This document shows positions 16,001 through 38,983 of a stretch of DNA of 64,000 bases, one piece after another. Position 1 is the stretch's first letter, and each line of letters starts with the position of its first letter. The stretch is from positions 124,001 through 188,000 of IMG/VR virus record IMGVR_UViG_3300042511_000879; one strand, 5' to 3'. A program made the translations under genes and the position numbers. The notes beneath the pieces were generated by a model. The model saw only the letters and a list, made by a program, of their open reading frames with translations. It ran no database searches and was not told the DNA's origin.

Positions 16001-17172
16001 TGGGCACCTTGAAAACCTTGAAATCCTTGGGCTCCTTGTATTCCTTGGGCACCTTGAAAACCTTGGGCACCTTGAAAACCTTGAAATCCTTGGGCACCTT
16101 GAAAACCTTGGGCACCTTGAAAACCTTGAAATCCTTGGGCTCCTTGTATTCCCTGAGCACCTTGGAAACCTTGGGCACCTTGAAAACCTTGGGCACCTTG
16201 AAAACCTTGGGCACCTTGAAAACCTTGAAAACCTTGGGCACCTTGAAAACCTTGAAAACCTTGGGCTCCTTGTATTCCCTGAGCACCTTGGAAACCTTGG
16301 GCTCCTTGTATTCCCTGAGCTCCTTGTATTCCCTGAGCACCTTGTAATCCTTGGGCTCCTTGAAAACCTTGGGCTCCTTGAAAACCTTGTATTCCCTGAG
16401 CACCTTGAAAACCTTGGGCACCTTGTATTCCCTGGGCGCCTTGAAATCCTTGAGCACCTTGTATTCCTTGAGCACCTTGTATTCCCTGAGCACCTTGAAA
16501 ACCTTGGGCACCTTGGAAACCTTGGGCTCCTTGAAAACCTTGAGCACCTTGAAAACCTTGTATTCCTTGGGCTCCTTGTATTCCCTGAGCACCTTGAAAT
16601 CCTTGGGCTCCTTGTATTCCCTGGGCGCCTTGAAATCCTTGAGCACCTTGAAATCCTTGGGCTCCTTGTATTCCCTGAGCACCTTGAAAACCTTGGGCAC
16701 CTTGGAAACCTTGGGCTCCTTGTATTCCCTGGGCACCTTGTATTCCTTGGGCTCCTTGTATTCCCTGAGCACCTTGAAAACCTTGGGCACCTTGGAAACC
16801 TTGGGCTCCTTGTATTCCCTGGGCGCCTTGGAAACCTTGAGCACCTTGAAATCCTTGGGCTCCTTGTATTCCTTGGGCACCTTGAAAACCTTGGGCACCT
16901 TGAAAACCTTGGGCGCCTTGGAAACCTTGAGCACCTTGTCTACCTTGGGCACCTTGTATTCCTTGAGCACCTTGAAATCCTTGAGCACCAGTTCCTTGGA
17001 AGCCTTGAGCACCTTGGAAACCCTGAGGACCATTAGCTGGCCCTTGAGGACCTTGAGGTCCTGTGTCAACAGTTCCACCTAGATTTTTTAGTGAACCATA
17101 TTTGTCATGGACGAATACCGGACCTAGGTCTGTGCTGGAATTTCCATATTTATCTAGTCTTTGTATGTTCAT
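10081..17172 (-). CDS. Giant collagen-like (Gly-X-Gln) fibre protein, 2363 aa
   Basis: Four GAQ/GFQ/GIQ triplet blocks separated by globular domains. Confidence 0.85.
11404..11522 (-). repeat. Collagen block 4 (about 40 aa)
   Basis: Gly-X-Gln periodicity; boundaries approximate. Confidence 0.85.
12368..13235 (-). repeat. Collagen block 3 (about 290 aa)
   Basis: Gly-X-Gln periodicity; boundaries approximate. Confidence 0.9.
13738..15392 (-). repeat. Collagen block 2 (about 550 aa)
   Basis: Uninterrupted Gly-X-Gln periodicity; boundaries approximate. Confidence 0.9.
15921..17063 (-). repeat. Collagen block 1 (9-nt unit tandem repeat)
   Basis: GGTGCTCAA/GGTTTCCAA/GGAATACAA-type units; boundaries approximate. 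Confidence 0.9.
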
Positions 17173-18872: not shown

Positions 18873-19931
18873 TTAAAAACCACAGCTCGCACTAGTGTCT
18901 CCAATAACACCTTCTGTTGATATTTCGTATAAGCCACCGTCCCAATAAGTTCCAGACGCAGGATAGGCTTGAGTTTGATTTAATCCAAAATAAAGACCAC
19001 CTCCATTATAAGGAAATGTTAAAAGAGAATTAGTATATACGATATCTCCAGTAGAAAGTGCAGCTAGACTTTTTGCAGCAAAAAGAGGTTCAGTGACTTC
19101 ATACGGAGGAGCGCAGCCTGGGTTAGTTTCAAAAACGTTGTCGGATCCGCCAATGGGAGTCCTATAAAATTGATAAAATGCAGGAACTTCCAGTCGATTA
19201 ACTAATTTAATGTTACCTTGAGGCACTGAATTAACCTTGAATGTTGCACCCGGTGATATACTTAATACATATTGTCCTAATCCAGGAGTTCCAGTTTCTA
19301 CTACAAGGTATGGTGCCGTTCCGGAAATGTTCAATGCAGTGTAAAGAATAGAATCAGTAGGTGGCGATAGATATAAATAATCATAATTATAATCTACAAG
19401 TGCAAGTCGGATATCCGGTTGTGTGTTAAACGCATCAATAGCATTGGCATTTAAAGATATAGCATTCCATCCATCGGTTGGAGCTACTGGAGTTGCAATA
19501 TAATCGGTAGTATTACCGCTCATTGATCCACCTGTGTTGTATCCTGATATTTGGAAGAAATCAGCTGCTGAAATATTTGTGGTAGTTGATGGTTTATCTG
19601 CCTGCACTACCATAATATTATTAGCTAGATCTCCTCCAAAGTGTACCCATAATGTTGCAGAAGTGATTTGAGTTGTAAAGCCACTGTCCATTGTAGAAAA
19701 TGCCATAAAGTATCTACTAATTGCTGCTCGCCAATTGCCGAATGTGAAATTGTTCCAAGAAGCTCCAATGGAGTCTTGTACATCTTGATTAACTCTAGCA
19801 ATAGGAAGGTTACCATATCCATTATCACGGTTAGATAGCCATTGATTTTGGTCAAATTGTTCTCCAAAGGAATCTGAATCTTCAACTAAAATGCTTCCTC
19901 TAGTTGTCGCTGATGTTATATTATATTCCAT
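18873..19931 (-). CDS. Virion structural protein
   Basis: 352 aa, T/S/G/N-rich and beta-rich, adjacent to the collagen gene. Confidence 0.55.
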   Translation of the reverse strand: MEYNITSATTRGSILVEDSDSFGEQFDQNQWLSNRDNGYGNLPIARVNQDVQDSIGASWNNFTFGNWRAAISRYFMAFSTMDSGFTTQITSATLWVHFGGDLANNIMVVQADKPSTTTNISAADFFQISGYNTGGSMSGNTTDYIATPVAPTDGWNAISLNANAIDAFNTQPDIRLALVDYNYDYLYLSPPTDSILYTALNISGTAPYLVVETGTPGLGQYVLSISPGATFKVNSVPQGNIKLVNRLEVPAFYQFYRTPIGGSDNVFETNPGCAPPYEVTEPLFAAKSLAALSTGDIVYTNSLLTFPYNGGGLYFGLNQTQAYPASGTYWDGGLYEISTEGVIGDTSASCGF

Positions 19932-22567
19932 TATTCTAAAATTGATGATATTAGTTCAACCCAAGTTTGATCTGGATTAAAATAGATTGTTGATGTATTA
20001 TCTATATTATGTCCAATAATTCTAACTACATTACCTGAAGCAGTTGGGGCTGTTGCTGTAAATAATCCATCACTGGTAGACATGTATAGGGTTGATCCTG
20101 ATATTGAAGTAGTGTATGATGCTGCATTATATCTAGCATATCCTCTTATTAACATACCAGCTGCTGGATTTGTTCCGAGTGCTATAGCAAGCATTCCTAA
20201 CGAATGCGTAGTTGATGTTGAATTTGTTAATGTCCATGTTAATGATGAATTTAGGTAATATAATGATCCTGGCGTAAATCCTTGAGCACCAGTTCCAAAA
20301 TATGCAATTTCACCAGATGATGCAGGAGCAGCAGCAGGAGGTACATAATTTCCTCCGGTTCCTTGATAGCCTTGATATCCTTGAAAACCTTGAGCACCTT
20401 GGAATCCTTGAGCACCTTGGAAACCTTGAGCACCAGTTCCTTGGGCACCTTGGAAGCCTTGAGCACCTTGGAAGCCTTGAGCACCTTGGAAACCTTGAGC
20501 ACCTTGGAATCCTTGAGCACCAGTTCCTTGAGCACCTTGGAAACCTTGAGCACCAGTTCCTTGAGCACCTTGGAAGCCTTGAGCACCTTGGAATCCTTGA
20601 GCACCTTGGAAACCTTGAGCACCAGTTCCTTGAGCACCTTGGAATCCTTGAGCACCAGTTCCTTGAGCACCTTGGAATCCTTGAGCACCAGTTCCTTGGG
20701 CACCTTGGAATCCTTGGAAACCTCGATCACCTCGATCACCGGCTCTACTAAATGTAACCATTGCTCCTGTTCCTGGTACCATGGTACCAATACCTCCTAT
20801 ATAACTAACAGTTATGTAACCCATATTACTTACGCTAGTAGAAAGTATTTGATAATCTGCGTAATCGGAGGTTCTTCCTAAACGGCTAATTCGTAAATTA
20901 CCTTTAATTGGGTTCGTACTAGTACCCAATGCAGTTACCCAGCTAGTGGAACTTGCACCATCAGCATCAAAATTACTAGTAAAGATAGTTGTTGTAGTTG
21001 CAAATGTAGTGCCATTAAATCCAATACCCCCGGGCGGTGGAGATTGAAAAGTACCATAAAAATTAACAACAAACCTTAAACTATCTCCTCCATAATTTCC
21101 AAAACTTCCTTGTATTCCCTGAAAACCTTGGGCTCCTTGGAATCCTTGATCACCTTGGAAACCTTGGGCTCCTTGTATTCCTTGAGCACCTTGATATCCT
21201 TGATATCCTCGATCTCCAATGTCTCCTGTTCTTTGGAACGTAATATAAGCACGTTGGTCTGGAGGTGCAGTTCCACCAACAGGGCTAGAAATAAATGCAA
21301 TTGGAACGTCGAAATGGTCATTATGTTCAGTATGGTTACCTGTTATATTAAAAAGTGCATAAAGTAGAGGGTCAGTATATGAGGTTATTTTAAACGTACC
21401 TTTAATTTGAGAAGATGAGTCATCAATTGTCTGTAAGAATGATTGGATATCCACTGAGTTATAGTCTAAATATGAAATATACATCATTGTACCAAATTCA
21501 TTGATTCTTACATGTCCTGCAGTCAAATTTGTAGGATCAGTTGTAATATCATCATAATAAAACTCAAACGTTGCTCCACCAAAAGATCCTGGTTCACCTT
21601 GGTCTCCTTGTGTTCCTTGAAATCCTTGTACACCTTGTGCACCTTGAAATCCTTGAAATCCTCGAGGACCTGTTTTTGCATATGATACTATAAGTTCAGT
21701 ACCTACAGGCCAAGTTGTTCCAATAGCAGATACAGTTCCTCCAACGTATGATAATTCAATAGTACTATAAGTTCCAGTGCTTCCACCAGTTATTGTATAG
21801 TCTAAATATTCAGTTGTTCTGCCTGGTTTGGTAATTCTTAAACTTCCTCCAAGTGCAATCATTGAAGTAAACCATGCAGTTGCATTTGCATTATCATCAT
21901 CCGTATTGCTTGCAATAATAGTAAGAGTTGGGCTAGGAAGTGTTGTTGTATTACTAAATGTAATTGCTCCAAATCCCGCAGTAACTCCATTATAACTTCC
22001 TACTAAAAATCTTAAACTATCTCCACCATAATTTCCTACTGATCCTACAGATCCTTGATGTCCTTGTCTACCTTGAAAACCTTGATAACCTTGATAACCT
22101 TGGGCTCCAGGAGTTCCAGGGCTTCCAGGTGTACCTACAGCTGAAGCTCCTTGTGTTCCTTGAAAACCTTGCGTTCCTTGTCGACCTTGAGCACCTTGAA
22201 AACCTTGGAAACCTTGTCTACCTTGAGCTCCTTGTCGACCTTGAAATCCTTGGTCTCCTGTAGTTGTAGCAACTGCAGTAGGTACCCATACCCTGTCGCC
22301 AACGAGTGCTCCAGCTAGGATTAAAGCAGTATCACCCGAGGTTACAATATATAATTTAAGTACCTTTTCAACATCATTATCAATATCGATAGTTCCATCA
22401 TTATTAGTTCCCATTACTCTGAATCCATGAATAACTTGTCCAATTAAGTCCAAGTTGTAATCCATTTCTGGGTGAAATAAGGCTCTTCCAAGTTCTCCTG
22501 GATATAAAGGGTTATATTTACCCAATGGTCCTCGTTCTTCAGAATTTTGTAAATTATCTTGTGGCAT
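19931..22567 (-). CDS. Second collagen-like (Gly-X-Gln) fibre protein, 878 aa
   Basis: GxQ blocks including GAQGTGAQ variants, separated by GGDSLRF/GGATFEF domains; TATAAATA twice upstream (22574-22587). Confidence 0.8.
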   Translation of the reverse strand: MPQDNLQNSEERGPLGKYNPLYPGELGRALFHPEMDYNLDLIGQVIHGFRVMGTNNDGTIDIDNDVEKVLKLYIVTSGDTALILAGALVGDRVWVPTAVATTTGDQGFQGRQGAQGRQGFQGFQGAQGRQGTQGFQGTQGASAVGTPGSPGTPGAQGYQGYQGFQGRQGHQGSVGSVGNYGGDSLRFLVGSYNGVTAGFGAITFSNTTTLPSPTLTIIASNTDDDNANATAWFTSMIALGGSLRITKPGRTTEYLDYTITGGSTGTYSTIELSYVGGTVSAIGTTWPVGTELIVSYAKTGPRGFQGFQGAQGVQGFQGTQGDQGEPGSFGGATFEFYYDDITTDPTNLTAGHVRINEFGTMMYISYLDYNSVDIQSFLQTIDDSSSQIKGTFKITSYTDPLLYALFNITGNHTEHNDHFDVPIAFISSPVGGTAPPDQRAYITFQRTGDIGDRGYQGYQGAQGIQGAQGFQGDQGFQGAQGFQGIQGSFGNYGGDSLRFVVNFYGTFQSPPPGGIGFNGTTFATTTTIFTSNFDADGASSTSWVTALGTSTNPIKGNLRISRLGRTSDYADYQILSTSVSNMGYITVSYIGGIGTMVPGTGAMVTFSRAGDRGDRGFQGFQGAQGTGAQGFQGAQGTGAQGFQGAQGTGAQGFQGAQGFQGAQGFQGAQGTGAQGFQGAQGTGAQGFQGAQGFQGAQGFQGAQGFQGAQGTGAQGFQGAQGFQGAQGFQGYQGYQGTGGNYVPPAAAPASSGEIAYFGTGAQGFTPGSLYYLNSSLTWTLTNSTSTTHSLGMLAIALGTNPAAGMLIRGYARYNAASYTTSISGSTLYMSTSDGLFTATAPTASGNVVRIIGHNIDNTSTIYFNPDQTWVELISSILE

Positions 22568-23082: not shown

Positions 23083-23475
23083 TTATACGAAATATTTTCT
23101 CATTAGAAATGTAACTATTGCTCCACTTGCTGTTAATAAGGCAATAAGTACTTTAACAACTCCATTTTTCCATCTGACAAGAGATTTATGTTCTTCAATT
23201 AATTTATCACGCTCAACCTTCCATTCCTCTTGTTCTTGTCTAAATTCTGAATTCTTTTTATTTTCTACAATCACACCATCAAAGGGATTCAGGAGTTGTT
23301 TTTTCAATCCTCTAATCTCTTCTTTCATTTCATTTTGATTCTCCATCAATTTTTCTAATGTGTTCTCTATTTGAATATAATTAGGGTCTTCAATTCGTCT
23401 TTTGAATGAAGAAAATAAATCATACAGTTCAAGAATCATTTCTTGTGGGCTTTGGTCTTGCTTCATATACAGCAT
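23083..23475 (-). CDS. Coiled-coil protein with C-terminal transmembrane helix (holin/XhlA-like candidate)
   Basis: Heptad-rich body followed by VVKVLIALLTASGAIVTFLMRK. Confidence 0.5.
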   Translation of the reverse strand: MLYMKQDQSPQEMILELYDLFSSFKRRIEDPNYIQIENTLEKLMENQNEMKEEIRGLKKQLLNPFDGVIVENKKNSEFRQEQEEWKVERDKLIEEHKSLVRWKNGVVKVLIALLTASGAIVTFLMRKYFV

Positions 23476-23522
23476 TGGGTCTTTTTAGTCTATAATATAT
23501 ATCAAACTAAAAAGACCCAATG
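23473..23522 (-). promoter_or_regulatory. 17-bp hairpin masking the start codon, with a late promoter motif in the loop
   Basis: CATTGGGTCTTTTTAGT (23473-23489) pairs with ACTAAAAAGACCCAATG (23506-23522); GATATATA at 23496-23503. Confidence 0.7.
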
Positions 23523-23547
23523 TGGGTTTTACTATGTATTTATAGGA

Positions 23548-24018
23548 TTATTTATATAACTTTGCAGTAAAGTTACGGGCTCCTCTTGGAAGATTCTCGC
23601 CGTGAGGTCCTTTTGCTTTATAATCTTGTAGTAATTTAATGGCCTCTTCAGGTGATGTTGCTTCAACTTCCCAATCCCATTCCATTCCATTCGTATCATC
23701 GAAAAATACTGTGTAAATACTTTTCTTTGCTTCATCTATTCCAGAGCCAATTTCAGGAGTTCCATAGTGTGCAATCCATTCTTCTCTAGTCATGTTAGCA
23801 GCTTGAGCCTGCATTCCTAAGAAATCATATTCATGCATAATTGTTTCAGATTCTGTAACTTTATCATAAAGTTCAGTATCTCCATTCCATTTCCAATCAG
23901 CAGCATCAAAATCTTTAAGTTTCTTAGCTTTTTGATATTCTGAAGACGATAAATGGTCAGCATTAAGATTTATAGCACCTTCGCCAATAAACTCTTCGAA
24001 TAATTTTACTTTTTTCAT
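23548..24018 (-). CDS. Capsid-targeting-peptide protein (array gene 7)
   Basis: MKKVKLFEEFIGE|G; internal VTE|S and IDE|A. Confidence 0.65.
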   Translation of the reverse strand: MKKVKLFEEFIGEGAINLNADHLSSSEYQKAKKLKDFDAADWKWNGDTELYDKVTESETIMHEYDFLGMQAQAANMTREEWIAHYGTPEIGSGIDEAKKSIYTVFFDDTNGMEWDWEVEATSPEEAIKLLQDYKAKGPHGENLPRGARNFTAKLYK

Positions 24019-24025
24019 ATCTTTA

Positions 24026-24832
24026 TTAATTTTTTGGCCAGATCATTAGAGTTCCTGGATCGTTCCATTCTAACCACCAACCTGTTTTTTCAACTGTTGT
24101 TCTAAACTGTTTTAGTACTCCATTAGCATATTTTGATGAGTTGCTATAGTAATCAAAAATTGGATTACCTCCAAGTTCTTCTCCATTATCACCTGCGATC
24201 CAAATTCCTTCAGTTTGTCCGTTGAATTCTTCAGAAGTTCGGACAGTTCTAAGTTTGTATTTAGTTTCTAATAGGTTCATCAATTCGTCTCTAGTAGAAT
24301 CTTTTGCCTCATTCATAAATGATTCTGTAAGATTACCATCCTTGTCTATGGCATCTGAATAAAGATATTCTCCTTTGCCATTGTAAGTAACTGTTTTTGC
24401 TACATATTCTTTTGTCTCAGGATTCCAATAATGAGTTTTACCACCAGGTTCTGTCATTTTTTTCAGGACTCCATTTCTAGCATTACTAATTAGTGTTGCA
24501 TTAACCTTTGCAGTTAAGGTGTCGTGATTTGTTAATTTATCTTGGGAGGCTGCTGCTAAGGCTTCATTAGTAACTGATTCATTCCAAACAACCTGTCCTC
24601 CAGCATCTTCAATATGAAACTTGGCTCTTGGAAATTCTTTTTTAAGGGCTTCATATTTTGCAGGGATCAAGTCTTGAATTTTAATATTGTTCGACTGTCC
24701 AACTACTTTATTATACTCAATGGCTACAATCGACCATGGTCCACCATCTCCGGCTCTAACGCCTTTCATCATTTTACCCCAAGAAGTTGTGGCTTCTGCG
24801 ATATATTGTTCAAATAATTTTACTTTTTTCAT
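24026..24832 (-). CDS. Capsid-targeting-peptide protein (array gene 6)
   Basis: MKKVKLFEQYIAE|A; internal WNE|SVTNE|A and LTE|SFMNE|A. Confidence 0.65.
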   Translation of the reverse strand: MKKVKLFEQYIAEATTSWGKMMKGVRAGDGGPWSIVAIEYNKVVGQSNNIKIQDLIPAKYEALKKEFPRAKFHIEDAGGQVVWNESVTNEALAAASQDKLTNHDTLTAKVNATLISNARNGVLKKMTEPGGKTHYWNPETKEYVAKTVTYNGKGEYLYSDAIDKDGNLTESFMNEAKDSTRDELMNLLETKYKLRTVRTSEEFNGQTEGIWIAGDNGEELGGNPIFDYYSNSSKYANGVLKQFRTTVEKTGWWLEWNDPGTLMIWPKN

Positions 24833-25194
24833 AGTGAATAAAAAGGTCCTTTGTTTATTTTTTTAAGATATGTCATTTCAGAGTCAGTCAATTTAGATGC
24901 AATTAACTTTTGCCATTGTCCTCTTTGTTTTGTACGAGGTAGTAATAAAAATTGTTTAATGTCCTCATCACTTTCTAGACGTGAAACAATTTTAGTAACG
25001 GCAGCATCCGATTTCCATTTTTTATATTGGTCTTTCCAAGACGTTGAGTTTTGAAAGTCTTGTCCTGCGTCAGTTCCTAACCACATTGCAAAAATCCATG
25101 GAGAAAACCATGTAAGTCCCCAAGCAACTGGTAAAAGAGTATCTATTAGATTAGCCTCGTTAACAAATTCTTCGTATAGTTTTACATGTTTCAT
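24829..25194 (-). CDS. Capsid-targeting-peptide protein (array gene 5)
   Basis: MKHVKLYEEFVNE|A; start placed at the second ATG (ATGA overlap); hydrophobic segment follows. Confidence 0.65.
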   Translation of the reverse strand: MKHVKLYEEFVNEANLIDTLLPVAWGLTWFSPWIFAMWLGTDAGQDFQNSTSWKDQYKKWKSDAAVTKIVSRLESDEDIKQFLLLPRTKQRGQWQKLIASKLTDSEMTYLKKINKGPFYSL

Positions 25195-25958
25195 TTCCAT
25201 TTTAAGTTTAATTCATCAGTCATTGCATCCATTAAATCATTAAATTTAGACGGATCTTTCATTACTGCTTTTATCTTAGTTTTTATCTCATCATCAGATA
25301 GTTTCAAATTTCTTACCCAACCTTTAGCATCAGCTAGATTCATTGGGTCTTTAAAGAAATCTTTTATATTGGTAGATTCGTTAACTGTAGATTCATGAAC
25401 ACCTGGTCCATTTTCTATTTTCTCTAATGAAACCCAATATACTTTATCATTTCCGTAATTGTCTACAAAACTGGATTCTACGCCTGTCCATCTTTTAATA
25501 AATTTACCTAAACCTGATTGAGGTCCTCCGTATTTATCGTCTTTTACTTTAACCATTAAATATTCCTCATTACTTGAGGGTCTCTTTGATGGGGCCTTAA
25601 ACTCTACAACATTGAATTGTTTTCTGATTAAAGTTTCCAGTTTTTTAATATCGCTATCAATTCCATTATTAGATTCCTTAATTGGAATTTCCGGCATGTA
25701 TTTATATTTTTGGTATTGATTGTTTGAAAGCTCTGTAGCCTTAATGTACTTTTCTAACTGATCGACTGTATTAAATATACGTCCACCTGCATCAATATCA
25801 TAACCTTTGTAGTATTGGTTATATTTGGCAGCAAGTTTTCCACCATTCATTTTCTCCCATTCTTTCTTAAAAAGAATTTGGTCGTTTCCAACAATTTCAT
25901 TTGGAAATACATCCTTACCTTCAGTAATGTACTGCTCGAATAATTTTACTTTTTTCAT
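25191..25958 (-). CDS. Capsid-targeting-peptide protein (array gene 4)
   Basis: MKKVKLFEQYITE|G; internal IKE|S and VHE|STVNE|S. Confidence 0.65.
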   Translation of the reverse strand: MKKVKLFEQYITEGKDVFPNEIVGNDQILFKKEWEKMNGGKLAAKYNQYYKGYDIDAGGRIFNTVDQLEKYIKATELSNNQYQKYKYMPEIPIKESNNGIDSDIKKLETLIRKQFNVVEFKAPSKRPSSNEEYLMVKVKDDKYGGPQSGLGKFIKRWTGVESSFVDNYGNDKVYWVSLEKIENGPGVHESTVNESTNIKDFFKDPMNLADAKGWVRNLKLSDDEIKTKIKAVMKDPSKFNDLMDAMTDELNLKWK

Positions 25959-25967
25959 ACTAATGAA

Positions 25968-26342
25968 TTATACTCGAGAAACCCAAGTATATATGTTTTT
26001 GTTAGGAACTCCTAATAGAGTATCTCGAACTTCCATTCTAATTAAATAATCTTTATCTGTTTTACCATCAATAAACTTACAAGTGATTACATCACCGGTT
26101 TTAGCTTTTGATAGGTCCAAAGATGCAATGTCTCTAACACTGAATCCTGCTGATTCAGGTGATTTACCTTTCTCCCAGAAACTAACTAATGCCTGTGCCG
26201 CTTTAGTTGAATCATTATTTGCTTTTACAGTATTGTTTGAACCAATACTTGGTATGGTAACTTCTTCCCAGTAGGTTGCACCACTCATTTTCTCTTTTTT
26301 TGATTCATTTACAAATCCTTCGAATGTAGATATGTGTTTCAT
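25968..26342 (-). CDS. Capsid-targeting-peptide protein (array gene 3)
   Basis: MKHISTFEGFVNE|S; start reassigned to the internal ATG just after the upstream stop. Confidence 0.6.
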   Translation of the reverse strand: MKHISTFEGFVNESKKEKMSGATYWEEVTIPSIGSNNTVKANNDSTKAAQALVSFWEKGKSPESAGFSVRDIASLDLSKAKTGDVITCKFIDGKTDKDYLIRMEVRDTLLGVPNKNIYTWVSRV

Positions 26343-26343
26343 A

Positions 26344-26814
26344 TTATTGTACTTGTATATTTGTTCTAATTGATAATCCTGAATAACCATTCCAGATTCC
26401 AATGTTAAAGTCTGGTATAATTTTTTCAATTTTCTTTAAATTACCAATATGTATTGCGGTCATTGGTAATTCTATAAACCAAACTCCATAATTTGTAGTT
26501 GCAGTTAATTGATATTTTTTCATACCAATTCCAATAAGACTATCAATTATCTTTTGAACCTCTTCTGGATATACTTCAGACTTTGCCTCGTTTGTAAGAC
26601 TTTCATTTTCATTCCAAATAGTTTGTAACCAAGCCTCTAAACTTTTGAGTTCTTTAACTGACTTTGGTTTGCCATATTCGTCCATAAAAGCCTTTCTGAA
26701 TCCCGTGAAAGAATCTGCCTCTTGAGCCATGATATGAATATCTCCAATACTGGATTCATAAATAAAGGATTGAGACTCTCCTAAGAACTCGTTAAATAGT
26801 TGCATATGTTTCAT
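26344..26814 (-). CDS. Capsid-targeting-peptide protein (array gene 2)
   Basis: MKHMQLFNEFLGE|S; internal IYE|S and ENE|SLTNE|A. Confidence 0.65.
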   Translation of the reverse strand: MKHMQLFNEFLGESQSFIYESSIGDIHIMAQEADSFTGFRKAFMDEYGKPKSVKELKSLEAWLQTIWNENESLTNEAKSEVYPEEVQKIIDSLIGIGMKKYQLTATTNYGVWFIELPMTAIHIGNLKKIEKIIPDFNIGIWNGYSGLSIRTNIQVQ

Positions 26815-26816
26815 GA

Positions 26817-27503
26817 TTATTCTATTGATGTTACATCTTTTTCTAAGTTTTCAGTTGAAAACTCGATAGGTAATGAAACGTAACTCTTTTTAGTATCGCC
26901 ATAAGGGGCTGCAAAAATCTTTCCGGAAGAGATTCCAGAAGTTTTAGTAACTTTCCATGTTTCACCATCTTTAAAGTTTAGAATAGTACCAACTTTAATG
27001 TCTTTAACATTGATTCCTTCGCTAACTTCTGATTCATTAACTTCAAATCCATCTGATTGGATTGCTTTCTTAGCCTTACGCAATTCAACTGCATTTTTGG
27101 CTTTAACCATCATCTCTTCAGAATCTATTCCAGGCTCTGCAATCGCATCAACTCCAGCATCATGTAAAATGTTTTGAACGTATTCTACGTCATCCTCATC
27201 GGTATTGTAATTAAAAGAGAATGAATATTCTTTAGCTTCATTTAAGTTTCTTTCAAAGATTAAACCCGGGTCTTGTAATGCACTACTACCAGAAATATTT
27301 TTGGCAATAGCCATAATAACATCTTCATATCTTTTTTTAGTTAATGATTCGCTATGTTCTGTATTTAATACAGGTGCAATCTGTTTAACTAATTTATCTA
27401 TTAAAGATGTATCAATTTTAGACTTCCTTGAATTAATACTTTTATTAGAAACTGATATCATAGCTTCATTTAAGAATTCTTCGAATAATTGTGTATATTT
27501 CAT
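26817..27503 (-). CDS. Capsid-targeting-peptide protein (array gene 1)
   Basis: MKYTQLFEEFLNE|A; internal LNE|A and VNE|SEVSE|G; GATATATAA upstream at 27527-27535. Confidence 0.65.
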   Translation of the reverse strand: MKYTQLFEEFLNEAMISVSNKSINSRKSKIDTSLIDKLVKQIAPVLNTEHSESLTKKRYEDVIMAIAKNISGSSALQDPGLIFERNLNEAKEYSFSFNYNTDEDDVEYVQNILHDAGVDAIAEPGIDSEEMMVKAKNAVELRKAKKAIQSDGFEVNESEVSEGINVKDIKVGTILNFKDGETWKVTKTSGISSGKIFAAPYGDTKKSYVSLPIEFSTENLEKDVTSIE

Positions 27504-27526: not shown

Positions 27527-27982
27527 TTATATATCAAGATTTTCAAGATAGTTTATAATCTCGGTCCAATCCTCAAATCCTGGTTGTCCAAACTGAATCC
27601 ATTCTCCACGGAATTCGGCAGCGCCATTATTTGGACGGTCGTCGATTAAGAAATCACCAATACAAAGGTCTTTACGATGTGAGATAATTAACCTCTTGTG
27701 CGCATATTTACCAAGATTCTTTTGTACCCATCTTCTTTTAGATGAGAAACTTGTTGGATTGCTCCAAGGTGCAGTTGTTAGGAAATAGATGTCAAATTTA
27801 TCCCATAGGTATTTGACTGCTTCAATAGCACCTGGAATAGGTTCTGGTTCTTCAAAAAGTTCTTTGTCAATTGAAGTTAACCTCCCAAGTTTTTCAACGG
27901 CATTGGGTCCATGTCTCTTGATTGCATGACTCTCTAAGTCTACCATTACTCCATCAAGGTCAATATAAAGTATTTTTTTCAT
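27527..27982 (-). CDS. 5'(3')-deoxyribonucleotidase (NT5C, HAD family)
   Basis: IDLDGVM, P.PGAIEA, FLTTAPW.N...K..WV, GDFLIDD motifs. Confidence 0.9.
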   Translation of the reverse strand: MKKILYIDLDGVMVDLESHAIKRHGPNAVEKLGRLTSIDKELFEEPEPIPGAIEAVKYLWDKFDIYFLTTAPWSNPTSFSSKRRWVQKNLGKYAHKRLIISHRKDLCIGDFLIDDRPNNGAAEFRGEWIQFGQPGFEDWTEIINYLENLDI

Positions 27983-30486: not shown

Positions 30487-31704
30487 TTAGTTACTTAGTG
30501 GTGCTTTAATTTCTGCGTGTGATTGATAGTTCTCAACAGTAAAATCACCTCTATCATATGTGAATATTCCGCCACCTATTCTCATTTTATTGTTTGGGTT
30601 TATTTTTAACGTCGGTAATGGAAAAGGTTCACTAGTACTGTATGGAATGTTATAAGTTTCAAAATACTCACTCATACCCCCACCAAATGGCATTAATTCA
30701 TCAACTGCTTTATTGTATTGTTCCTCACCCATTTTGTCTTTTAGCATTTCTGCCCTTTCTGGGAATTTTAATTCTCTTCCTATTTGTTTCTTTGCTTGTT
30801 CAATATGATTTGAATAAAGGTGAACATCGCCAAGATTTCCAATTAACTGATCAGGAACCATATTGACCTCTTTTGCCAAGATTTCTAATAGGAGTCCATA
30901 ACTTGTAATGTTGAATGGTAAACCTAAGAATGTATCTACTGAACGTTGATTCCACATTAGGGAGATTGCTCTGGTTGGGATTCCAGTTAAATCATTACCT
31001 TCCATATTTACTGAATCATAACCATATCTTTTCCAATATAAATCTTCTCTTTCACCTTCACTCAACTCTCTTGTATAAACTTGAATTCCATAATGACAAG
31101 GTGGAAGAACCATTTGGTCTAATTCTCCAACATTCCAAGCATTGACCATTAATCGTCTTGAGTCTGGATTTGTTTTAAGATCGTTGATTAGATTTTGGAT
31201 TTGGTCTACCCATACGTTCCCAATAAAGATTTCACCTGTTTCTGAGTTCATGGTAGGTTTTACATCCCATTTTCTCCATTGCTTACCATAAATAGGCCCC
31301 AACTCACCCCACATCTTTCCAAACTCATTATCTGTTTTAATTTTGTTGATGAACTCTTCTTGCGTTAATGATTCTACCTGACCAGTCATTCCCATTGTAA
31401 TTGAATATCTCTTATAACAGTCTCCATCCCAAATATGGCAATTATTATCAACCAAATACTTAATATTTGTATCACCTCGTAAGAACCAAAGAAGTTCTGT
31501 TACGATTGTTTTGAATGGCATCTTTTTAGTTGTAAGTAGTGGAAACCCTTCGGACATTTTGTGTCTTATTTGGCGTCCAAAAACTGAGACCGTTCCTGTA
31601 CCTGTCCTGTCACCTTTAACTACTCCATTGTCTAATATGTCTTGGAGCAGGTTGGTGTATTGCTTGTCTAAAGTATTATTTTTTATCGCATTTATTTTTT
31701 CCAT
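30487..31704 (-). CDS. thyA: Thymidylate synthase
   Basis: DRTGTGT, FPLLTTKK, ELLWFLRG, GPIYGKQWR, PDSRR, LPPCH, QRSVD.FLGLPFN, GDVHLY.NH. Start set at the MEKIN ATG; contains lineage-specific insertions. Confidence 0.95.
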   Translation of the reverse strand: MEKINAIKNNTLDKQYTNLLQDILDNGVVKGDRTGTGTVSVFGRQIRHKMSEGFPLLTTKKMPFKTIVTELLWFLRGDTNIKYLVDNNCHIWDGDCYKRYSITMGMTGQVESLTQEEFINKIKTDNEFGKMWGELGPIYGKQWRKWDVKPTMNSETGEIFIGNVWVDQIQNLINDLKTNPDSRRLMVNAWNVGELDQMVLPPCHYGIQVYTRELSEGEREDLYWKRYGYDSVNMEGNDLTGIPTRAISLMWNQRSVDTFLGLPFNITSYGLLLEILAKEVNMVPDQLIGNLGDVHLYSNHIEQAKKQIGRELKFPERAEMLKDKMGEEQYNKAVDELMPFGGGMSEYFETYNIPYSTSEPFPLPTLKINPNNKMRIGGGIFTYDRGDFTVENYQSHAEIKAPLSN

Positions 31705-32236
31705 GGTCTCTACTAATAACGGTTTTTGTTGTAAATTTTCCACATATACTACATGTAGCACAGTTTTTTTCTTTATTTTTTGGTTTTTTTAGTGACTCTA
31801 TATGTGTATTACTTAAAGGTTTTCCTTTTTTAGTTTTTGAAGTTGATTCACTTCTTTTTTTAATTCTTTCAGGTGAATCTTTTTGTTTACTTCTAGCAAT
31901 ACTTAATTTTTTTCTGTGCTCGTCTGTAAATATAACACCTTTTTTAAAACCTCCAGTATTACCTCCATCTCCTTGCTCAGGTATTAAATTTGCAAATTCT
32001 TTACTATTAACAACATCCCATAATTTTGAATAATACAAACCCATTTGTATTAATTTTTCTTTATCTTCAGTTTCAAATAAAATTGTTGTTTTTATATCAT
32101 TAGATGATATGTTATGTGTTTTTAAATGTCTTTTCCATACGGTGCCACTTCCCTTATATTTATAAGGATCGGTATTTACACATTTTCCTAGATATTTTAA
32201 ACCTAATGGTGATTCTTTTAAATATAATATTATCAT
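31676..32236 (-). CDS. Free-standing GIY-YIG homing endonuclease
   Basis: ILYL...KYLG...Y.GSG..WK.H...E; NUMOD3-like HRKKLS; C-terminal CxxC. Confidence 0.85.
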   Translation of the reverse strand: MIILYLKESPLGLKYLGKCVNTDPYKYKGSGTVWKRHLKTHNISSNDIKTTILFETEDKEKLIQMGLYYSKLWDVVNSKEFANLIPEQGDGGNTGGFKKGVIFTDEHRKKLSIARSKQKDSPERIKKRSESTSKTKKGKPLSNTHIESLKKPKNKEKNCATCSICGKFTTKTVISRDHGKNKCDKK

Positions 32237-32285: not shown

Positions 32286-32684
32286 TTACAATATGTCTTT
32301 ATATGAATCTGTTTCTTTTAATATTGCGTCAAATGAGATTAAATTATCAACCCTAACTGTATTATCTTCAAGGACATGTCCTATCATCCTAGGTCTAAAT
32401 ACAATATCATCTAATAGAGTTTTTAACTCCTTTCCCCTGGGCGTATCGAGGACTTTGATTTCTGCAAAAAGAGTATCTCCTTCCACTTGAAGGTTTTCGA
32501 CTTGATGCGAAACTCTTTCTAAAGAGGTAAAAGAAGTACTTTCAGGATAACCAAGTTCTCCAAACATTTGAACTCCATTCGAAACTTTCTGTTTAAATTG
32601 AGCAACCATTTGTTCTAAACATTCATCAGTGTACATTCTACCATTAAGATTAACCGTGTTGGATTTTAATACTGATGTTTTCAT
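32286..32684 (-). CDS. T4 gp21-like prohead protease paralog, catalytic residues altered
   Basis: NLNGRMY, GELGYP (gp21 GELNHP), VSH, DTPRG, FRPRMIG (gp21 GVSSRGLG). Confidence 0.7.
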   Translation of the reverse strand: MKTSVLKSNTVNLNGRMYTDECLEQMVAQFKQKVSNGVQMFGELGYPESTSFTSLERVSHQVENLQVEGDTLFAEIKVLDTPRGKELKTLLDDIVFRPRMIGHVLEDNTVRVDNLISFDAILKETDSYKDIL

Positions 32685-33395
32685 TCATTTAACTATTTGA
32701 GTTGGAAGTTCTAATTTAAGAAATTTGTAAAGTGCCTCTTGAGATGGTCTGGCATTCTCATGTTGGTGTGGTATAATCCAAGCCTTTCCGTCATAATTAA
32801 CAATAGGCTTTGGCGTAATCATATACTCTAAAATTCCAACAGCATTTGTAGTAACTACGTCTTGATGCTTTTCATTAACAATTGTAAATCTACCATCCAG
32901 TAAATCATACACTCTGAAAAGGTCACCTTCAAAGTTTAAGAGACTTAAACGAGGACAGTGCGTCGTATGCACATAATTGGCCTTTGATTTATCAAGTTCT
33001 TTGATTTTAGTTGCAACTTTTAATATTGCTGAATTGATATGCTTTTGCTTTTCTTCATACATTTTTACAATATCTTCACGTCTTCCATCATCAAGAAGGG
33101 TTTTAAAAACTAATTTTTCAATCTTGCTAATTAACTTTGATTTGATGCTCATTGGAGCCGATTCTACTGGAAGGAATATCAATTCCTCAATTTCGTATTT
33201 GTCAAATTTAAGTTTGAATTTAACCGAACGTGAGTATTTTTCAATAACTTCTAAATCAACGTTCATATAAACTACAGGGCCAAGTTTAACCCACAACACC
33301 CTTCCACCTTCTTGGGGTTTTGGCAATTGAACCTTTACACTAGAACCAATAACATTGTCTAGCATAAATTCAATATATTTCTTATTTAGTTCCAT
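32685..33395 (-). CDS. Hypothetical protein
   Basis: 236 aa ORF. Confidence 0.6.
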   Translation of the reverse strand: MELNKKYIEFMLDNVIGSSVKVQLPKPQEGGRVLWVKLGPVVYMNVDLEVIEKYSRSVKFKLKFDKYEIEELIFLPVESAPMSIKSKLISKIEKLVFKTLLDDGRREDIVKMYEEKQKHINSAILKVATKIKELDKSKANYVHTTHCPRLSLLNFEGDLFRVYDLLDGRFTIVNEKHQDVVTTNAVGILEYMITPKPIVNYDGKAWIIPHQHENARPSQEALYKFLKLELPTQIVK

Positions 33396-37876: not shown

Positions 37877-38983
37877 TTATTTGTTATTTATTTCTTTTAT
37901 CTTTTCAGGTGTTAATGCCTTTAAGAATTCAACATATAATCGTATGGCATATTTAACATCGTTCTTGTGACACATTTCTACAGTGGTATGCATGTATCTT
38001 AGTGGAGTTGCCAAGATTGCAGTTGGTGTACCCTCTAAAAAGAAGGACATTGTATCATTACCCATTGAACCGACTGTTAATTGAACTGGAATCTTAGCCT
38101 CTTTTGCAACCTCTCTTAACATTTTGTTAATTTTTCGGTGATTTTGTGCAGTGTACTCTAAACATGGACCTTCTCCACCTTTATTATCTCCATCTTTTGC
38201 TTTATCTATTTTAGGAGTATCAGTTGCATGGCAAACATCATGCACTAGGGCCAAATCAGCTTTAAGTGTTTTTGCAATTAAAGTGGCTCCATGTAATCCT
38301 ACCTCCTCTTGAACTGAATTAACTACATATAAATCATAAGGTAAATATGCATCCTCTTCTACCAGTTTTCTTAGGGCTTCAGCAATAATATAACCACCAA
38401 TCTTGTTGTCTAATGAACGTCCAACATAATAGTTTCCAATCTCTTCTAATTGAGTGTCAAATGTGATTAAGTTTCCAATTTCAACTCCAGCTTTTACAAC
38501 AGCCTCCTTGTCTTTAAGACCCATATCAACCCATAGTTCCTCTGGACTGTAACCCATCGAAGTGTATTCTTTTCGGGTATGAATTGCTGGCCATCCAAAA
38601 AGTCCTCTTAATTTTCTACCATCATGAGTGTGTATCATTACCGTTTTAGAAGGTGCAATCATATTGTCGCTTCCACCATGTCTTTTTACCCGGATCATTC
38701 CATCACTGTCGATGTTTGTAATAATCCATGCAATTTCATCACAATGCGCTTCAATTACAACTTTAGGAGTCCATGGCTCTAAACCTTGTCCAGATTTTGT
38801 TTTTCCGCGGAAGACTGCATAAGCCGTACCATACGCATCAATTTTTACATTTCCATTTACTAATGGTCTAACATAATCCAACCAGATCTTTTGACCCTCT
38901 CCTTCTTGGGCTACTGGAGCGTACGCATTAAGGTAGTTATATAAGAACTCCTTATTTTTCTTCAATTGTTTTGTTTTCTTCAT
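37877..38983 (-). CDS. M42-family metallo-aminopeptidase
   Basis: AHCDEI, LDNKIGG, QEEVGL.GA, DV.HA.D, YMHTTVE metal-ligand motifs. Confidence 0.9.
   Translation of the reverse strand: MKKTKQLKKNKEFLYNYLNAYAPVAQEGEGQKIWLDYVRPLVNGNVKIDAYGTAYAVFRGKTKSGQGLEPWTPKVVIEAHCDEIAWIITNIDSDGMIRVKRHGGSDNMIAPSKTVMIHTHDGRKLRGLFGWPAIHTRKEYTSMGYSPEELWVDMGLKDKEAVVKAGVEIGNLITFDTQLEEIGNYYVGRSLDNKIGGYIIAEALRKLVEEDAYLPYDLYVVNSVQEEVGLHGATLIAKTLKADLALVHDVCHATDTPKIDKAKDGDNKGGEGPCLEYTAQNHRKINKMLREVAKEAKIPVQLTVGSMGNDTMSFFLEGTPTAILATPLRYMHTTVEMCHKNDVKYAIRLYVEFLKALTPEKIKEINNK

What the first reader, a model, noticed from the sequence alone, without database searches (positions are those of the whole stretch)
23548..27503. 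Array of seven capsid-targeting-peptide genes that look like protease-processed polyproteins of unrelated small cargo domains
Seen: seven tandem genes share only an N-terminal 13-mer, MK(K/H/Y)(V/I/M/T)xx(F/Y)x(E/Q/G)(F/Y)xxE followed by A/S/G, and are otherwise unrelated. Five of them carry further, often doubled, linkers of the same type (WNE|SVTNE|A, LTE|SFMNE|A, VHE|STVNE|S, ENE|SLTNE|A, VNE|SEVSE|G, LNE|A, IDE|A) that divide them into roughly 40-100 aa modules, about 15 in total. The array follows a late-type GATATATAA motif. Established: T4 internal proteins carry a capsid-targeting sequence (IPII/III MKTYQEFIAE; IPI MKTFKEFT...), the gp21 prohead protease cuts after (L/I)xE, and injected IPI* blocks the GmrSD restriction enzyme. 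Inference: this is an expanded, shuffled cassette of packaged and injected effectors (possibly anti-defence) released from polyproteins by the prohead protease. That would make the linkers a sequence handle for mining new injected inhibitors.
Basis: partly seen in the sequence, partly recalled or inferred. Interest (0 to 1): 0.85.

Follow-up and report, generated by a model that had tools for sequence, protein, structure and literature searches.

The report
Phage head-cargo polyprotein gene array
Seven neighbouring genes of an uncultured 234-kb T4-like phage each begin with the short tag that phage T4 uses to load proteins into its head, and five of them join two or three unrelated small domains through what look like cutting sites of the phage's own head protease, so the phage probably packs about sixteen different small proteins: a known trick in a new, modular form, not yet shown by experiment.

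Summary
Seven tightly packed minus-strand genes (27503-23548) start with one 13-residue leader, found nowhere else in the window, and are otherwise unrelated. Five carry internal linkers. The doubled form, E-S-x-x-[NTS]-E before A/S/G, occurs 5 times in these 1,210 residues and never in 15,974 residues of other window proteins.

The leader has the spacing of T4's capsid-targeting sequence. The same 234-kb contig encodes a T4-type portal, an intact S77 (gp21-type) protease-scaffold fusion, and a Gp23 capsid protein that begins with M-A-N-L-I-N-E before A. That is the same [ILV]-x-E before a small residue that ends every leader and linker.

Linkers are remnants of the leader. Deletions and insertions between relatives break exactly inside them. 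In 150 remote homologues, 83 of 99 internal module starts follow E directly, against a 2.4% background. In AlphaFold models of two of the genes the doubled linkers lie in low-confidence stretches; all three modules fold separately in g6, two of three in g4.

Most likely these are capsid-targeted polyproteins cut into about 16 small packaged proteins. Packaging, cleavage, injection and any anti-defence role are untested. I rate it a new variant of the T4 internal-protein system.

The parts
27527..27535 (-). GATATATAA promoter-like motif 23 nt upstream of g1; a sigma-70-like match (27537-27510) overlaps it
   Evidence: The same motif lies about 25-35 nt upstream of this phage's S77 protease gene, the 369-aa and 253-aa head-region genes and the 110-aa leader gene; the portal has AATATATAA. 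In the window it occurs 8 times on the coding strand and once on the other. A function as a late promoter is inferred.
26817..27503 (-). g1, 228 aa: leader plus 3 modules
   Evidence: Module 1 is absent from relatives, where module 2 follows the leader directly.
27237..27263 (-). g1 linker 1: a 9-residue remnant of the leader ending N-L-N-E, followed by A
   Evidence: It aligns with residues 5-13 of the leaders of stand-alone genes in L017, L005, L006 and L020. The DNA junction of the L017 deletion lies here. Coordinates checked.
27018..27035 (-). g1 linker 2: doubled linker E-S-E-V-S-E, followed by G
   Evidence: Relatives insert or replace modules at this point (L005 231-aa protein, L006 214-aa protein).
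26344..26814 (-). g2, 156 aa: leader plus 2 modules
   Evidence: Module 1 recurs in 20 fetched loci in other contexts.
26587..26604 (-). g2 doubled linker E-S-L-T-N-E, followed by A
   Evidence: In L017, module 2 is deleted with one breakpoint at 26601, inside this linker.
25968..26342 (-). g3, 124 aa: leader plus 1 module
   Evidence: In L017 the whole gene, leader and Met included, is fused in frame behind g1-like and g2-like modules in a 340-aa ORF.
25191..25958 (-). g4, 255 aa: leader plus 3 modules
   Evidence: AlphaFold: module 2 is confident (pLDDT 73-88) and module 3 moderate. Low-confidence segments are 76-98 and 189-205, and module 1 is poorly modelled.
   Evidence: In L005 the same two modules lie in different proteins, each bounded by a doubled linker.
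25377..25394 (-). g4 doubled linker E-S-T-V-N-E, followed by S
   Evidence: Module 3 is a stand-alone 74-aa gene with its own leader in L005, and the linker aligns with that leader.
24829..25194 (-). g5, 121 aa: leader plus 1 module with a 23-residue hydrophobic run
   Evidence: Its homologue is an internal module of a 457-aa polyprotein in L011.
24026..24832 (-). g6, 268 aa: leader plus 3 modules
   Evidence: AlphaFold mean pLDDT 80.8, pTM 0.42: three separately folded domains.
24563..24580 (-). g6 linker 1: doubled linker E-S-V-T-N-E, followed by A
   Evidence: pLDDT is below 50 for residues 88-94. The L006 deletion junction is at 24561. Coordinates checked.
24308..24325 (-). g6 linker 2: doubled linker E-S-F-M-N-E, followed by A
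   Evidence: pLDDT dips to 68 for residues 171-180. The other L006 junction is at 24325, with a 20-nt overlap. In L005 the g4 module 2 is inserted here. The linker aligns with the leader of the stand-alone gene in L020.
23548..24018 (-). g7, 156 aa: leader plus 3 modules
   Evidence: Modules 2 and 3 occur separately in other loci.
   Evidence: In L020, L005 and L006, module 2 follows the leader directly, and the site aligns with the end of that leader.
23731..23739 (-). g7 single site I-D-E, followed by A: border of modules 2 and 3
   Evidence: The two modules are found apart in L007, L008, L011, L079, L132 and in L064.
23507..23527 (-). Terminator-like hairpin plus T-run, 20 nt after the g7 stop

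Best explanation
The array is a single transcription unit, from the promoter-like motif at 27535 to the hairpin at 23527, of seven capsid-cargo genes in an uncultured T4-like phage of about 234 kb, probably infecting Bacteroidota.

Proposed mechanism:
1. Each product starts with a 13-residue capsid-targeting sequence. Its two aromatic positions, three residues apart, dock the chain on the prohead core.
2. The following [ILV]-x-E before A/S/G is cut by the phage's gp21-type (S77) prohead protease.
3. In five of the seven genes, two or three unrelated small domains hang on one leader. They are joined by 6-9-residue linkers that are worn-down copies of the second half of the leader.
4. The protease cuts at the linkers too, so one targeting tag loads several cargoes in fixed proportion and releases about 16 proteins of 40-111 aa inside the head. 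T4 IPI* is 76 aa.
5. The leader- and linker-coding DNA also serves as short homology, by which modules are deleted, inserted, fused and split between related phages.

Shown here:
- the motifs and their statistics;
- descent of the linkers from the leader;
- separate folding of the modules in g6 and partly in g4;
- recombination breakpoints inside the linkers;
- an intact protease, portal and capsid gene on the same contig;
- the same site at the start of the capsid protein.

Inferred: docking, cleavage, retention in the head, injection, late expression. The role of the cargo in the host is unknown. Counter-defence is proposed only by analogy with T4 Ip1-3.
For: 1. Leader. It is found only at these seven N-termini in the window. 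Read against the T4 record, it has the same layout as the IPII/IPIII leaders: aromatic, two residues, aromatic, I, x, E, then A. In T4, residues 4 and 7 carry targeting and residues 8 and 10 carry processing (PMC9026906). The fetched loci hold 147 distinct leader-coding 42-mers with synonymous variation, so selection acts on the peptide.

2. Protease and head genes. The same 234,066-bp contig carries Portal_T4, a 640-aa Peptidase_S77 fusion and Gp23. The catalytic His and Ser of the fusion align with T4 gp21 His85 and Ser140.

3. Same site in the capsid protein. It starts M-A-N-L-I-N-E followed by A, then P-I-I-E followed by S. 54 of 66 distinct capsid proteins of the clade start this way. Asn at P2 dominates in leaders (96 of 147) and in linkers (21 of 32).

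4. Linker enrichment: doubled linkers 5 versus 0, shuffle mean 0.03.

5. Linkers align with the leaders of stand-alone genes in relatives. L017 holds an in-frame fusion with a complete internal leader.

6. Wide module shuffling. A scan of 1.84 billion protein representatives with g6 gave 517 hits. Matched stretches end at the module borders, and the modules sit at any position in proteins of 87-876 aa. 83 of 99 internal module starts are exactly E followed by A/S/G, against 2.4% per position.

7. DNA breakpoints lie within the leader- and linker-coding stretches.

8. AlphaFold of g6: three confident domains. The only low-confidence parts are the leader and the two linkers, and pTM is 0.42. In g4 the doubled linker also has low confidence.

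9. In relatives, a leader-bearing homologue of g6 module 3 sits between the portal and protease genes.

10. The promoter-like motif is shared with the head genes.

11. The 480 residues of the fusion that follow its protease domain, taken here as scaffold-like, hold 23 E-[ASG] sites against 13.4 expected from composition.
Against: - There are no protein-level data: the phage is uncultured and no virion proteome exists.
- The first half of each doubled linker has a poor P3 residue (W, L, V or E), so only the second site matches the consensus well.
- Breakpoints inside the linkers mean that recombination alone could help keep their DNA similar.
- Only 28 of 191 distinct leader-bearing proteins in the fetched loci carry a doubled linker, so polyproteins are a minority form.
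- g4 module 1 was not confidently modelled.
- The modules are a mix of acidic and basic.
- No module has a known family or fold, so 'effector' has no direct support.
- This phage's own 116-aa protein between portal and protease has a leader-like start but no E-[ASG] at the expected place.
- The promoter reading rests on a shared motif only.
Confidence: 0.65

Rival explanations
1. The proteins are packaged, leader-tagged multidomain proteins that stay intact. The linkers are only flexible spacers and recombination joints left over from gene fusion, and only the N-terminal leader is cut.
For: Breakpoints of deletions and insertions lie inside the linker-coding DNA. The linkers are demonstrably remnants of leaders, so their sequence could be historical. 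The first half-site has weak P3 residues.
Against: A relic under no selection should decay. Instead, Glu at P1 and a small residue at P1' hold at 83 of 99 internal module starts across homologues as low as 30-40% identical, with synonymous codon changes. What is kept is the processing half of the leader, while the two aromatic targeting positions are mostly lost. The kept pattern equals the start of the capsid protein.
Confidence: 0.15
2. The modules are cut out as proposed, but they are head-core, scaffold or DNA-condensing components that act inside the capsid. They are not injected proteins that act on the host.
For: In relatives, a homologue of g6 module 3 sits between the portal and protease genes, the place of the T4 core genes 67 and 68, and carries an acidic tail. 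g6 modules 1 and 3 are widespread. T4 also has leader-less core proteins cut by gp21 (PMC5694885).
Against: The array is highly variable between genomes whose flanking genes are 95-99% identical. Several modules have few or no homologues. Essential core parts would be conserved and single-copy. The array lies outside the head gene cluster, about 100 kb away on the contig. All three T4 internal proteins turned out to be injected restriction inhibitors (PMC12373910).
Confidence: 0.2
3. The shared N-terminus is not a capsid tag at all. It could be a translation-start or regulatory element, or another kind of sorting leader, and the resemblance to T4 is chance.
For: Three of the genes share 24 identical bases at the start. 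A paralogue family in a 246-kb contig has the same first 11 residues but no cut site.
Against: The peptide is conserved through synonymous and conservative changes in 147 distinct coding versions. It has no hydrophobic core like a secretion signal. Its ending recurs inside proteins, where translation start is irrelevant. It travels with T4-type head genes in many contigs. The key positions match those mapped in T4 (PMC9026906).
Confidence: 0.05

Closest known systems
T4 and T-even internal proteins (Ip1, Ip2, Ip3 and the variable ip loci) with their capsid-targeting sequence
   Same: Unrelated small proteins share only a short N-terminal leader with two aromatic positions and an [IL]-x-E cut site before a small residue. 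They are clustered in variable hotspots. The genome has a gp21-family protease, a T4-type portal and a Gp23 capsid protein (PMC3012670, PMC9026906, PMC12373910).
   Different: The leader is 13 rather than 10 residues. The host is probably Bacteroidota. The protease is fused to a long, probably scaffold-like, C-terminal region. No module is homologous to any T4 Ip. Most importantly, several cargo domains are chained behind one leader through leader-derived linkers. The T4 literature read here does not describe this: 'polyprotein' occurs 0 times in PMC12373910, and no listed paper holding 'prohead protease' also holds 'polyprotein'.
T4 Alt and the multi-site processing of gp21 substrates
   Same: One chain is cut by the prohead protease at more than one x-x-E site. 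Alt is cut at I-T-E-6 and L-T-E-619 (PMC5694885).
   Different: In Alt and gp22 the extra cuts remove propeptides or destroy scaffold. Here each piece between cuts is a separately folded, separately exchangeable domain.
Inner-body and ejection proteins of phiKZ, 201phi2-1 and SPN3US, processed by the S80 prohead protease
   Same: Jumbo phages pack many proteins and cut them after Glu in a three-residue motif. Redundant neighbouring sites occur in propeptides. A diverged protease paralogue exists (SPN3US gp117), as one does here at 32286-32684 (PMC5694885, PMC9026906).
   Different: A different protease family (S80 versus S77) and motif (S/A-x-E). No common short leader and no chains of unrelated cargo domains were described in the passages read.
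Polyproteins of RNA viruses and retroviruses
   Same: One translation product holds several functional units separated by sites for a virus-encoded protease.
   Different: Unrelated proteases and biology. Here the purpose would be co-loading of cargo into a DNA phage head, and cutting would happen inside the prohead.
Cassette shuffling in T4-type genomes (mobile regulatory cassettes, PMC2839356)
   Same: Short conserved sequences at gene borders mediate insertion, deletion and replacement of accessory genes between close relatives.
   Different: There the repeats are intergenic regulatory elements (title and abstract only). Here they are coding sequences for the leader and linkers, so exchange happens in frame and within genes.

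Membership tests
T4-type capsid-targeted internal proteins | Short N-terminal leader with two aromatic targeting positions three residues apart, followed by [ILV]-x-E and a small residue | tested here: met
   All seven genes have it. The layout matches the IPII/IPIII leaders read from NC_000866. The roles of the positions come from PMC9026906.
T4-type capsid-targeted internal proteins | A gp21-family (Peptidase_S77) prohead protease with catalytic residues in the same genome | tested here: met
   L242:12691-14613 on the same 234,066-bp contig. Pfam PF03420. His and Ser align with T4 His85 and Ser140. The S77-like ORF inside the window (32286-32684) is not the working enzyme, because both catalytic residues are replaced.
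T4-type capsid-targeted internal proteins | T4-type head module: Portal_T4 and a Gp23 capsid protein with a protease site | tested here: met
   The capsid protein begins with L-I-N-E followed by A, and 54 of 66 clade members do the same. Cleavage there is inferred.
T4-type capsid-targeted internal proteins | Mature parts mutually unrelated and variable between related phages | tested here: met
T4-type capsid-targeted internal proteins | Sequence homology of the mature parts to T4 Ip1, Ip2 or Ip3 | tested here: not met
   No PHROG or Pfam hit. No phmmer hit at E<=10 against the T4 proteins. The T4 proteins are themselves mutually unrelated (PMC12373910), so this bears on homology, not on mode of action.
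T4-type capsid-targeted internal proteins | Late expression together with the head genes | tested here: inconclusive
   GATATATAA-type motif shared with the protease, portal and other head-region genes. There are no transcript data.
T4-type capsid-targeted internal proteins | Physical presence in the capsid, removal of the leader, and injection with the DNA | not testable with these tools
   Uncultured phage, no proteome. No cultured phage in INPHARED matches the array.
Protease-processed polyprotein | Several independently folding units in one reading frame | tested here: met
   g6: three confident domains, pTM 0.42. g4: modules 2 and 3 are separate, module 1 is unresolved. The modules also exist as stand-alone genes in relatives.
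Protease-processed polyprotein | Recognition sites of the virus's own protease at the junctions between units | tested here: met
   Met at the sequence level only. The junctions carry the same [VILTM]-[N/x]-E before A/S/G as the leaders and the capsid protein start.
Protease-processed polyprotein | Release of the units by cleavage | not testable with these tools
   Needs mass spectrometry or an in vitro protease assay.
Anti-defence (counter-restriction) proteins | Similarity to a known inhibitor, or measured inhibition of a host defence system | tested here: not met
   No family or fold match: Pfam, PHROGs, PDB and BFVD Foldseek. Activity was not tested.

The most novel reading that the evidence does not exclude
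The leader-plus-linker grammar is a general plug-and-play cargo-loading system of a very large, almost wholly uncultured clade of T4-like phages. The clade is marked by at least 472 capsid-related viral contigs and at least 517 protein clusters that carry g6 modules alone. In this reading, one targeting tag loads strings of independently evolving small proteins, the head protease sets them free, they are injected with the DNA, and each disarms a different host defence. The linker would then be a sequence handle that delimits thousands of unknown injected inhibitor domains in metagenomes.
Probability: 0.3. Interest if true: 0.85.

Novelty: new variant of a known kind. Interest (0 to 1): 0.7.

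Why it matters
T4's injected internal proteins were only recently shown to be specific restriction inhibitors (PMC12373910), and finding more of them depends on recognising the leader.

Here the same loading principle appears in an abundant environmental phage lineage, probably of Bacteroidota, with an extra layer: cargo domains are chained, and the joints are both probable protease sites and recombination points. If cleavage is confirmed, three things follow:
- It is a new way for a DNA phage to pack many proteins in fixed proportion with one tag.
- It shows in-frame domain shuffling in action between near-identical genomes.
- It gives a simple rule, a leader at the start and E-S-x-x-N-E before A/S/G inside, for cutting unannotated metagenomic proteins into candidate injected effectors for structure prediction and defence-system screens.

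It could also guide the design of multi-cargo loading in engineered T4 capsids.

Tried and rejected
- DNA search of the array against 50,697 phage records found no match. tblastn of g6 against the same records found none. So no cultured model was identified.
- Pfam and PHROG scans of all seven proteins gave nothing significant. Foldseek of the g6 model found nothing in PDB at E<=0.001 and only one uncharacterised viral protein in BFVD.
- I first took the S77-like ORF in the window (32286-32684) for the working protease. The alignment showed both catalytic residues replaced, so I rejected it.
- A search of viral contigs with an alignment of clade capsid proteins returned 80 loci, none from this phage. 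A capsid contig from the same metagenome (L191) proved to belong to another phage. The head module was finally reached through synteny with L131 and L140 and two look-ups.
- I first assigned the extra leader gene left of the window to a 391-aa ORF. It is the 194-aa gene after it. No leader ORF was recovered from L122.
- Tenacibaculum phage PTm1, the nearest cultured capsid relative with an annotated record, has the protease-scaffold fusion but no M-A-N-L-I-N-E start. I did not scan it for arrays.
- One codon analysis used a wrong spacing and caught a different protein family. It was redone.

Full report
THE SEQUENCE

The window is AT-rich (about 33-36% G+C) and nearly all long ORFs are on the minus strand. 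Between 27503 and 23548 lie seven tightly packed genes. Spacers are 1-9 nt, and two junctions are ATGA overlaps.

Two starts differ from the mechanical ORF list. g3 begins at the inner ATG at 26342 and g5 at 25194. With these starts, all seven products begin with one 13-residue leader followed by A, S or G. A loose pattern for the leader hits these seven N-termini and nothing else in six frames of the 64 kb.

Splitting the proteins at the leader and at the internal sites gives 16 modules of 40-111 residues. None resembles another.

A GATATATAA motif lies 23 nt before g1, and a hairpin with a T-run lies 20 nt after g7. The seven genes therefore look like one transcription unit.

ARE THE INTERNAL LINKERS MORE THAN CHANCE?

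Yes. The doubled form, E-S-x-x-[NTSG]-E before A/S/G, occurs five times in the 1,210 non-leader residues and never in 15,974 residues of the other window proteins. Shuffling the same proteins gives 0.03 on average. N-E-[ASG] occurs 8 times against 8 in the thirteen-fold larger background.

Two single sites were added: I-K-E|S in g4 and V-T-E|S in g7.

WHAT GENOME IS THIS?

The window is identical to parts of three IMG/VR contigs of 234-236 kb and one of 117 kb. It encodes tail fibres, a ThyA-like enzyme, DNA ligase, NAMPT and lysis enzymes. A small protein with a type-IX-secretion sorting domain just beyond the window points to a Bacteroidota host.

The window has no head genes apart from a 132-aa Peptidase_S77-like ORF (32286-32684). 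In that ORF the catalytic His and Ser of T4 gp21 are replaced by Tyr and by Phe/Arg. The same replacements occur in a 45%-identical ORF of a 735-kb megaphage. It is an inactive paralogue, not the working enzyme.

The real head module was reached by synteny. On the same 234,066-bp contig lie:
- a Portal_T4 protein;
- a 116-aa acidic protein;
- a 640-aa Peptidase_S77 fusion, with a long C-terminal region taken here to be scaffold-like, whose His and Ser align with T4 gp21;
- a Gp23-family capsid protein.

The capsid protein starts M-A-N-L-I-N-E followed by A, and a few residues later has P-I-I-E followed by S. 54 of 66 distinct capsid proteins of this clade start in the same way. The nearest cultured capsid proteins are only 34-38% identical: Lak megaphages, Sphingomonas phage PAU and Tenacibaculum phage PTm1.

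THE LEADER COMPARED WITH T4

I read the T4 record rather than relying on memory. The IPII and IPIII leaders have an aromatic residue, two residues, an aromatic residue, then I-A-E before A. The leader here has the same layout, three residues longer at the front.

In T4 the two aromatic positions (4 and 7) carry targeting, and positions 8 and 10 carry processing (PMC9026906). T4 internal proteins share nothing but the leader, sit in variable loci, and are injected inhibitors of distinct GmrSD restriction enzymes (PMC3012670, PMC12373910).

Many lie beside T4-type portal, protease and capsid genes. The fetched loci hold 147 distinct coding versions with synonymous and conservative changes, so the peptide itself is under selection.

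This genome has at least two more leader genes outside the window: one of 194 aa just to the left, and one of 110 aa between the ribonucleotide reductase and DNA polymerase genes.

THE LINKERS ARE WORN-DOWN LEADERS AND MARK EXCHANGE POINTS

Related contigs carry different arrays between the same flanking genes. Modules that are internal here are stand-alone leader genes elsewhere:
- g4 module 3 is a 74-aa gene in L005;
- g6 modules 1 and 3 are 84-aa and 106-aa genes in L020;
- g1 module 2 and g7 module 2 follow the leader directly in several relatives.

In these alignments the internal linker lines up with the last 8-9 residues of the leader. In L017 a whole gene, with its Met and full leader, is fused in frame behind two other modules. 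The doubled look of the linkers simply reflects the two Glu residues of the leader.

What the linkers keep is the processing half ([VILTM]-[N]-E before a small residue). The aromatic targeting positions are mostly lost.

At the DNA level, the differences between the window and its relatives begin and end inside leader- or linker-coding stretches:
- L017 lacks g1 module 1 (junction 27464/27245) and g2 module 2 (26601/26348);
- L006 lacks g6 module 2 (24561/24325, with 20 shared bases);
- L005 has g4 module 2 inserted into g6 at linker 2.

Genes flanking these arrays are up to 95-99% identical, so the turnover is recent.

THE SAME PICTURE AT LARGE SCALE

An exhaustive HMMER scan of 1.84 billion representative proteins with g6 found 517 proteins at E<=0.001 and 240 at E<=1e-10. 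The matched stretch ends at the module borders (about 1-90, 84-180 and 165-268). The modules sit at the start, middle or end of proteins of 87 to 876 residues.

Among the best 150, 83 of 99 internal module starts are exactly a Glu followed by A/S/G. That pair occupies 2.4% of positions in the same proteins. All homologues are unnamed and without Pfam domains.

Doubled linkers occur in 28 of 191 distinct leader proteins in the fetched loci. One protein of 831 residues carries four strict doubled linkers.

STRUCTURE

With a 97-sequence alignment, AlphaFold gives g6 a mean pLDDT of 80.8 but a pTM of only 0.42. There are three confident domains. Confidence is low only for the leader (1-16) and linker 1 (88-94), with a dip at linker 2 (171-180).

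For g4 the model is weaker (mean 57.8). Module 2 is confident, and the doubled linker region (189-205) and the stretch around the I-K-E site (76-98) are low. Module 1 is unresolved.

Foldseek found no solved structure at E<=0.001 and one uncharacterised viral protein.

INTERPRETATION

The simplest account is that these are capsid-targeted proteins of the T4 kind, extended into polyproteins. One leader docks the chain on the prohead core. The S77 protease then removes the leader and cuts the leader-derived linkers, leaving about 16 small proteins in the head. T4 IPI* has 76 residues (PMC3012670).

The agreement of three independent site classes supports this: leader ends, linkers and the capsid protein start, all with Asn favoured at P2. 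So does the modest excess of E-[ASG] in the 480 residues of the fusion that follow its protease domain (23 against 13.4 expected). The shared upstream motif suggests expression with the head genes.

Everything after 'the sites are there' is inference. No experiment shows packaging, cleavage or injection.

WHAT REMAINS OPEN

- The first half-site of each doubled linker fits the consensus poorly.
- Recombination at the linkers could by itself favour their similarity.
- Polyproteins are a minority among leader proteins.
- At least g6 module 3 may be a head-core component, because in relatives it lies between portal and protease.
- The cargo function is unknown. Counter-defence is a reasonable guess from T4, and from the array's rapid turnover, but no more.

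COMPARISON AND NOVELTY

Arrays of unrelated proteins that share only a capsid-targeting leader are known in T-even phages. Multi-site processing by prohead proteases is known for Alt, gp22 and the phiKZ/SPN3US head proteins (PMC5694885, PMC9026906).

Four things appear not to be described in the papers searched:
- chaining of unrelated cargo domains behind one leader;
- linkers that descend from the leader itself;
- in-frame exchange of modules at those linkers;
- the setting in a large environmental clade with a protease-scaffold fusion.

I therefore rate it a new variant of a known kind, of good interest, pending a cleavage or proteomics test.

Noticed in passing
window 32286-32684 (-), with 32685-33395 (-) upstream: A 132-aa Peptidase_S77 (gp21-like) paralogue in which the catalytic His is Tyr and the catalytic Ser is replaced. 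The same substitutions are kept in a 45%-identical ORF of a 735-kb megaphage (LR756501). It starts directly after the stop of a 236-aa orphan ORF in the same frame. It may be a conserved inactive protease relative. SPN3US also has a diverged protease paralogue, gp117 (PMC5694885).
   Followed up: partly
window 31676-32236 (-) and 30487-31761 (-): A homing-endonuclease-like gene (PHROG_314) sits between the inactive protease paralogue and an unusually long ThyA-like ORF (424 aa, GTG start, two matched stretches), and overlaps the start of that ORF. This may be a mobile-element insertion, or a hydroxymethylase-type enzyme rather than a plain thymidylate synthase.
   Followed up: no
window 37877-38983 (-): A phage-encoded M42 glutamyl aminopeptidase (Pfam E 6.6e-69). 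This is curious in a phage whose head protease cuts after Glu. No link was tested.
   Followed up: no
window 19931-22567 (-) and 10081-17172 (-): Just downstream of the array lie an 878-aa protein with long collagen-like G-x-Q/G-F-Q repeats and a 2,363-aa ORF with long shadow ORFs in other frames. They are probably fibre or decoration proteins.
   Followed up: no
L035:223-606 (about 9 kb right of the window on the same contig): A 127-aa protein with a type-IX-secretion C-terminal sorting domain (Por_Secre_tail). It is the best clue here that the host is a member of the Bacteroidota.
   Followed up: no
window 24829-25194 (-), g5: The single module of g5 starts with a 23-residue hydrophobic run, which is unusual for a packaged soluble protein. 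Its homologue is an internal module of a 457-aa polyprotein in L011.
   Followed up: partly
L096:408-2209 and L129:2217-8302: A 246-kb contig carries five or more paralogues that start with the same first 11 leader residues but continue with S-E-E-E and have no E-[ASG] cut site. They lie next to its protease-scaffold and capsid genes. They may be an uncleaved variant of the tag.
   Followed up: no
L242:12270-12620: This phage's own 116-aa acidic protein between portal and protease has a leader-like start but lacks the cut site at the expected position. Its counterpart in L191 has a canonical one.
   Followed up: no
L033:11918-12502 and L240:4108-4440: Two further leader-bearing genes of the same genome lie outside the array: one of 194 aa about 1.2 kb left of the window, and one of 110 aa between the ribonucleotide reductase and DNA polymerase genes. 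The 110-aa protein is homologous to the first module of an 831-aa polyprotein in L009.
   Followed up: partly
window 23470-23545: Besides the terminator hairpin, the spacer after g7 holds a longer inverted repeat (about 16 nt arms) that reaches into the start of the next gene, and two TATAAATA matches.
   Followed up: no
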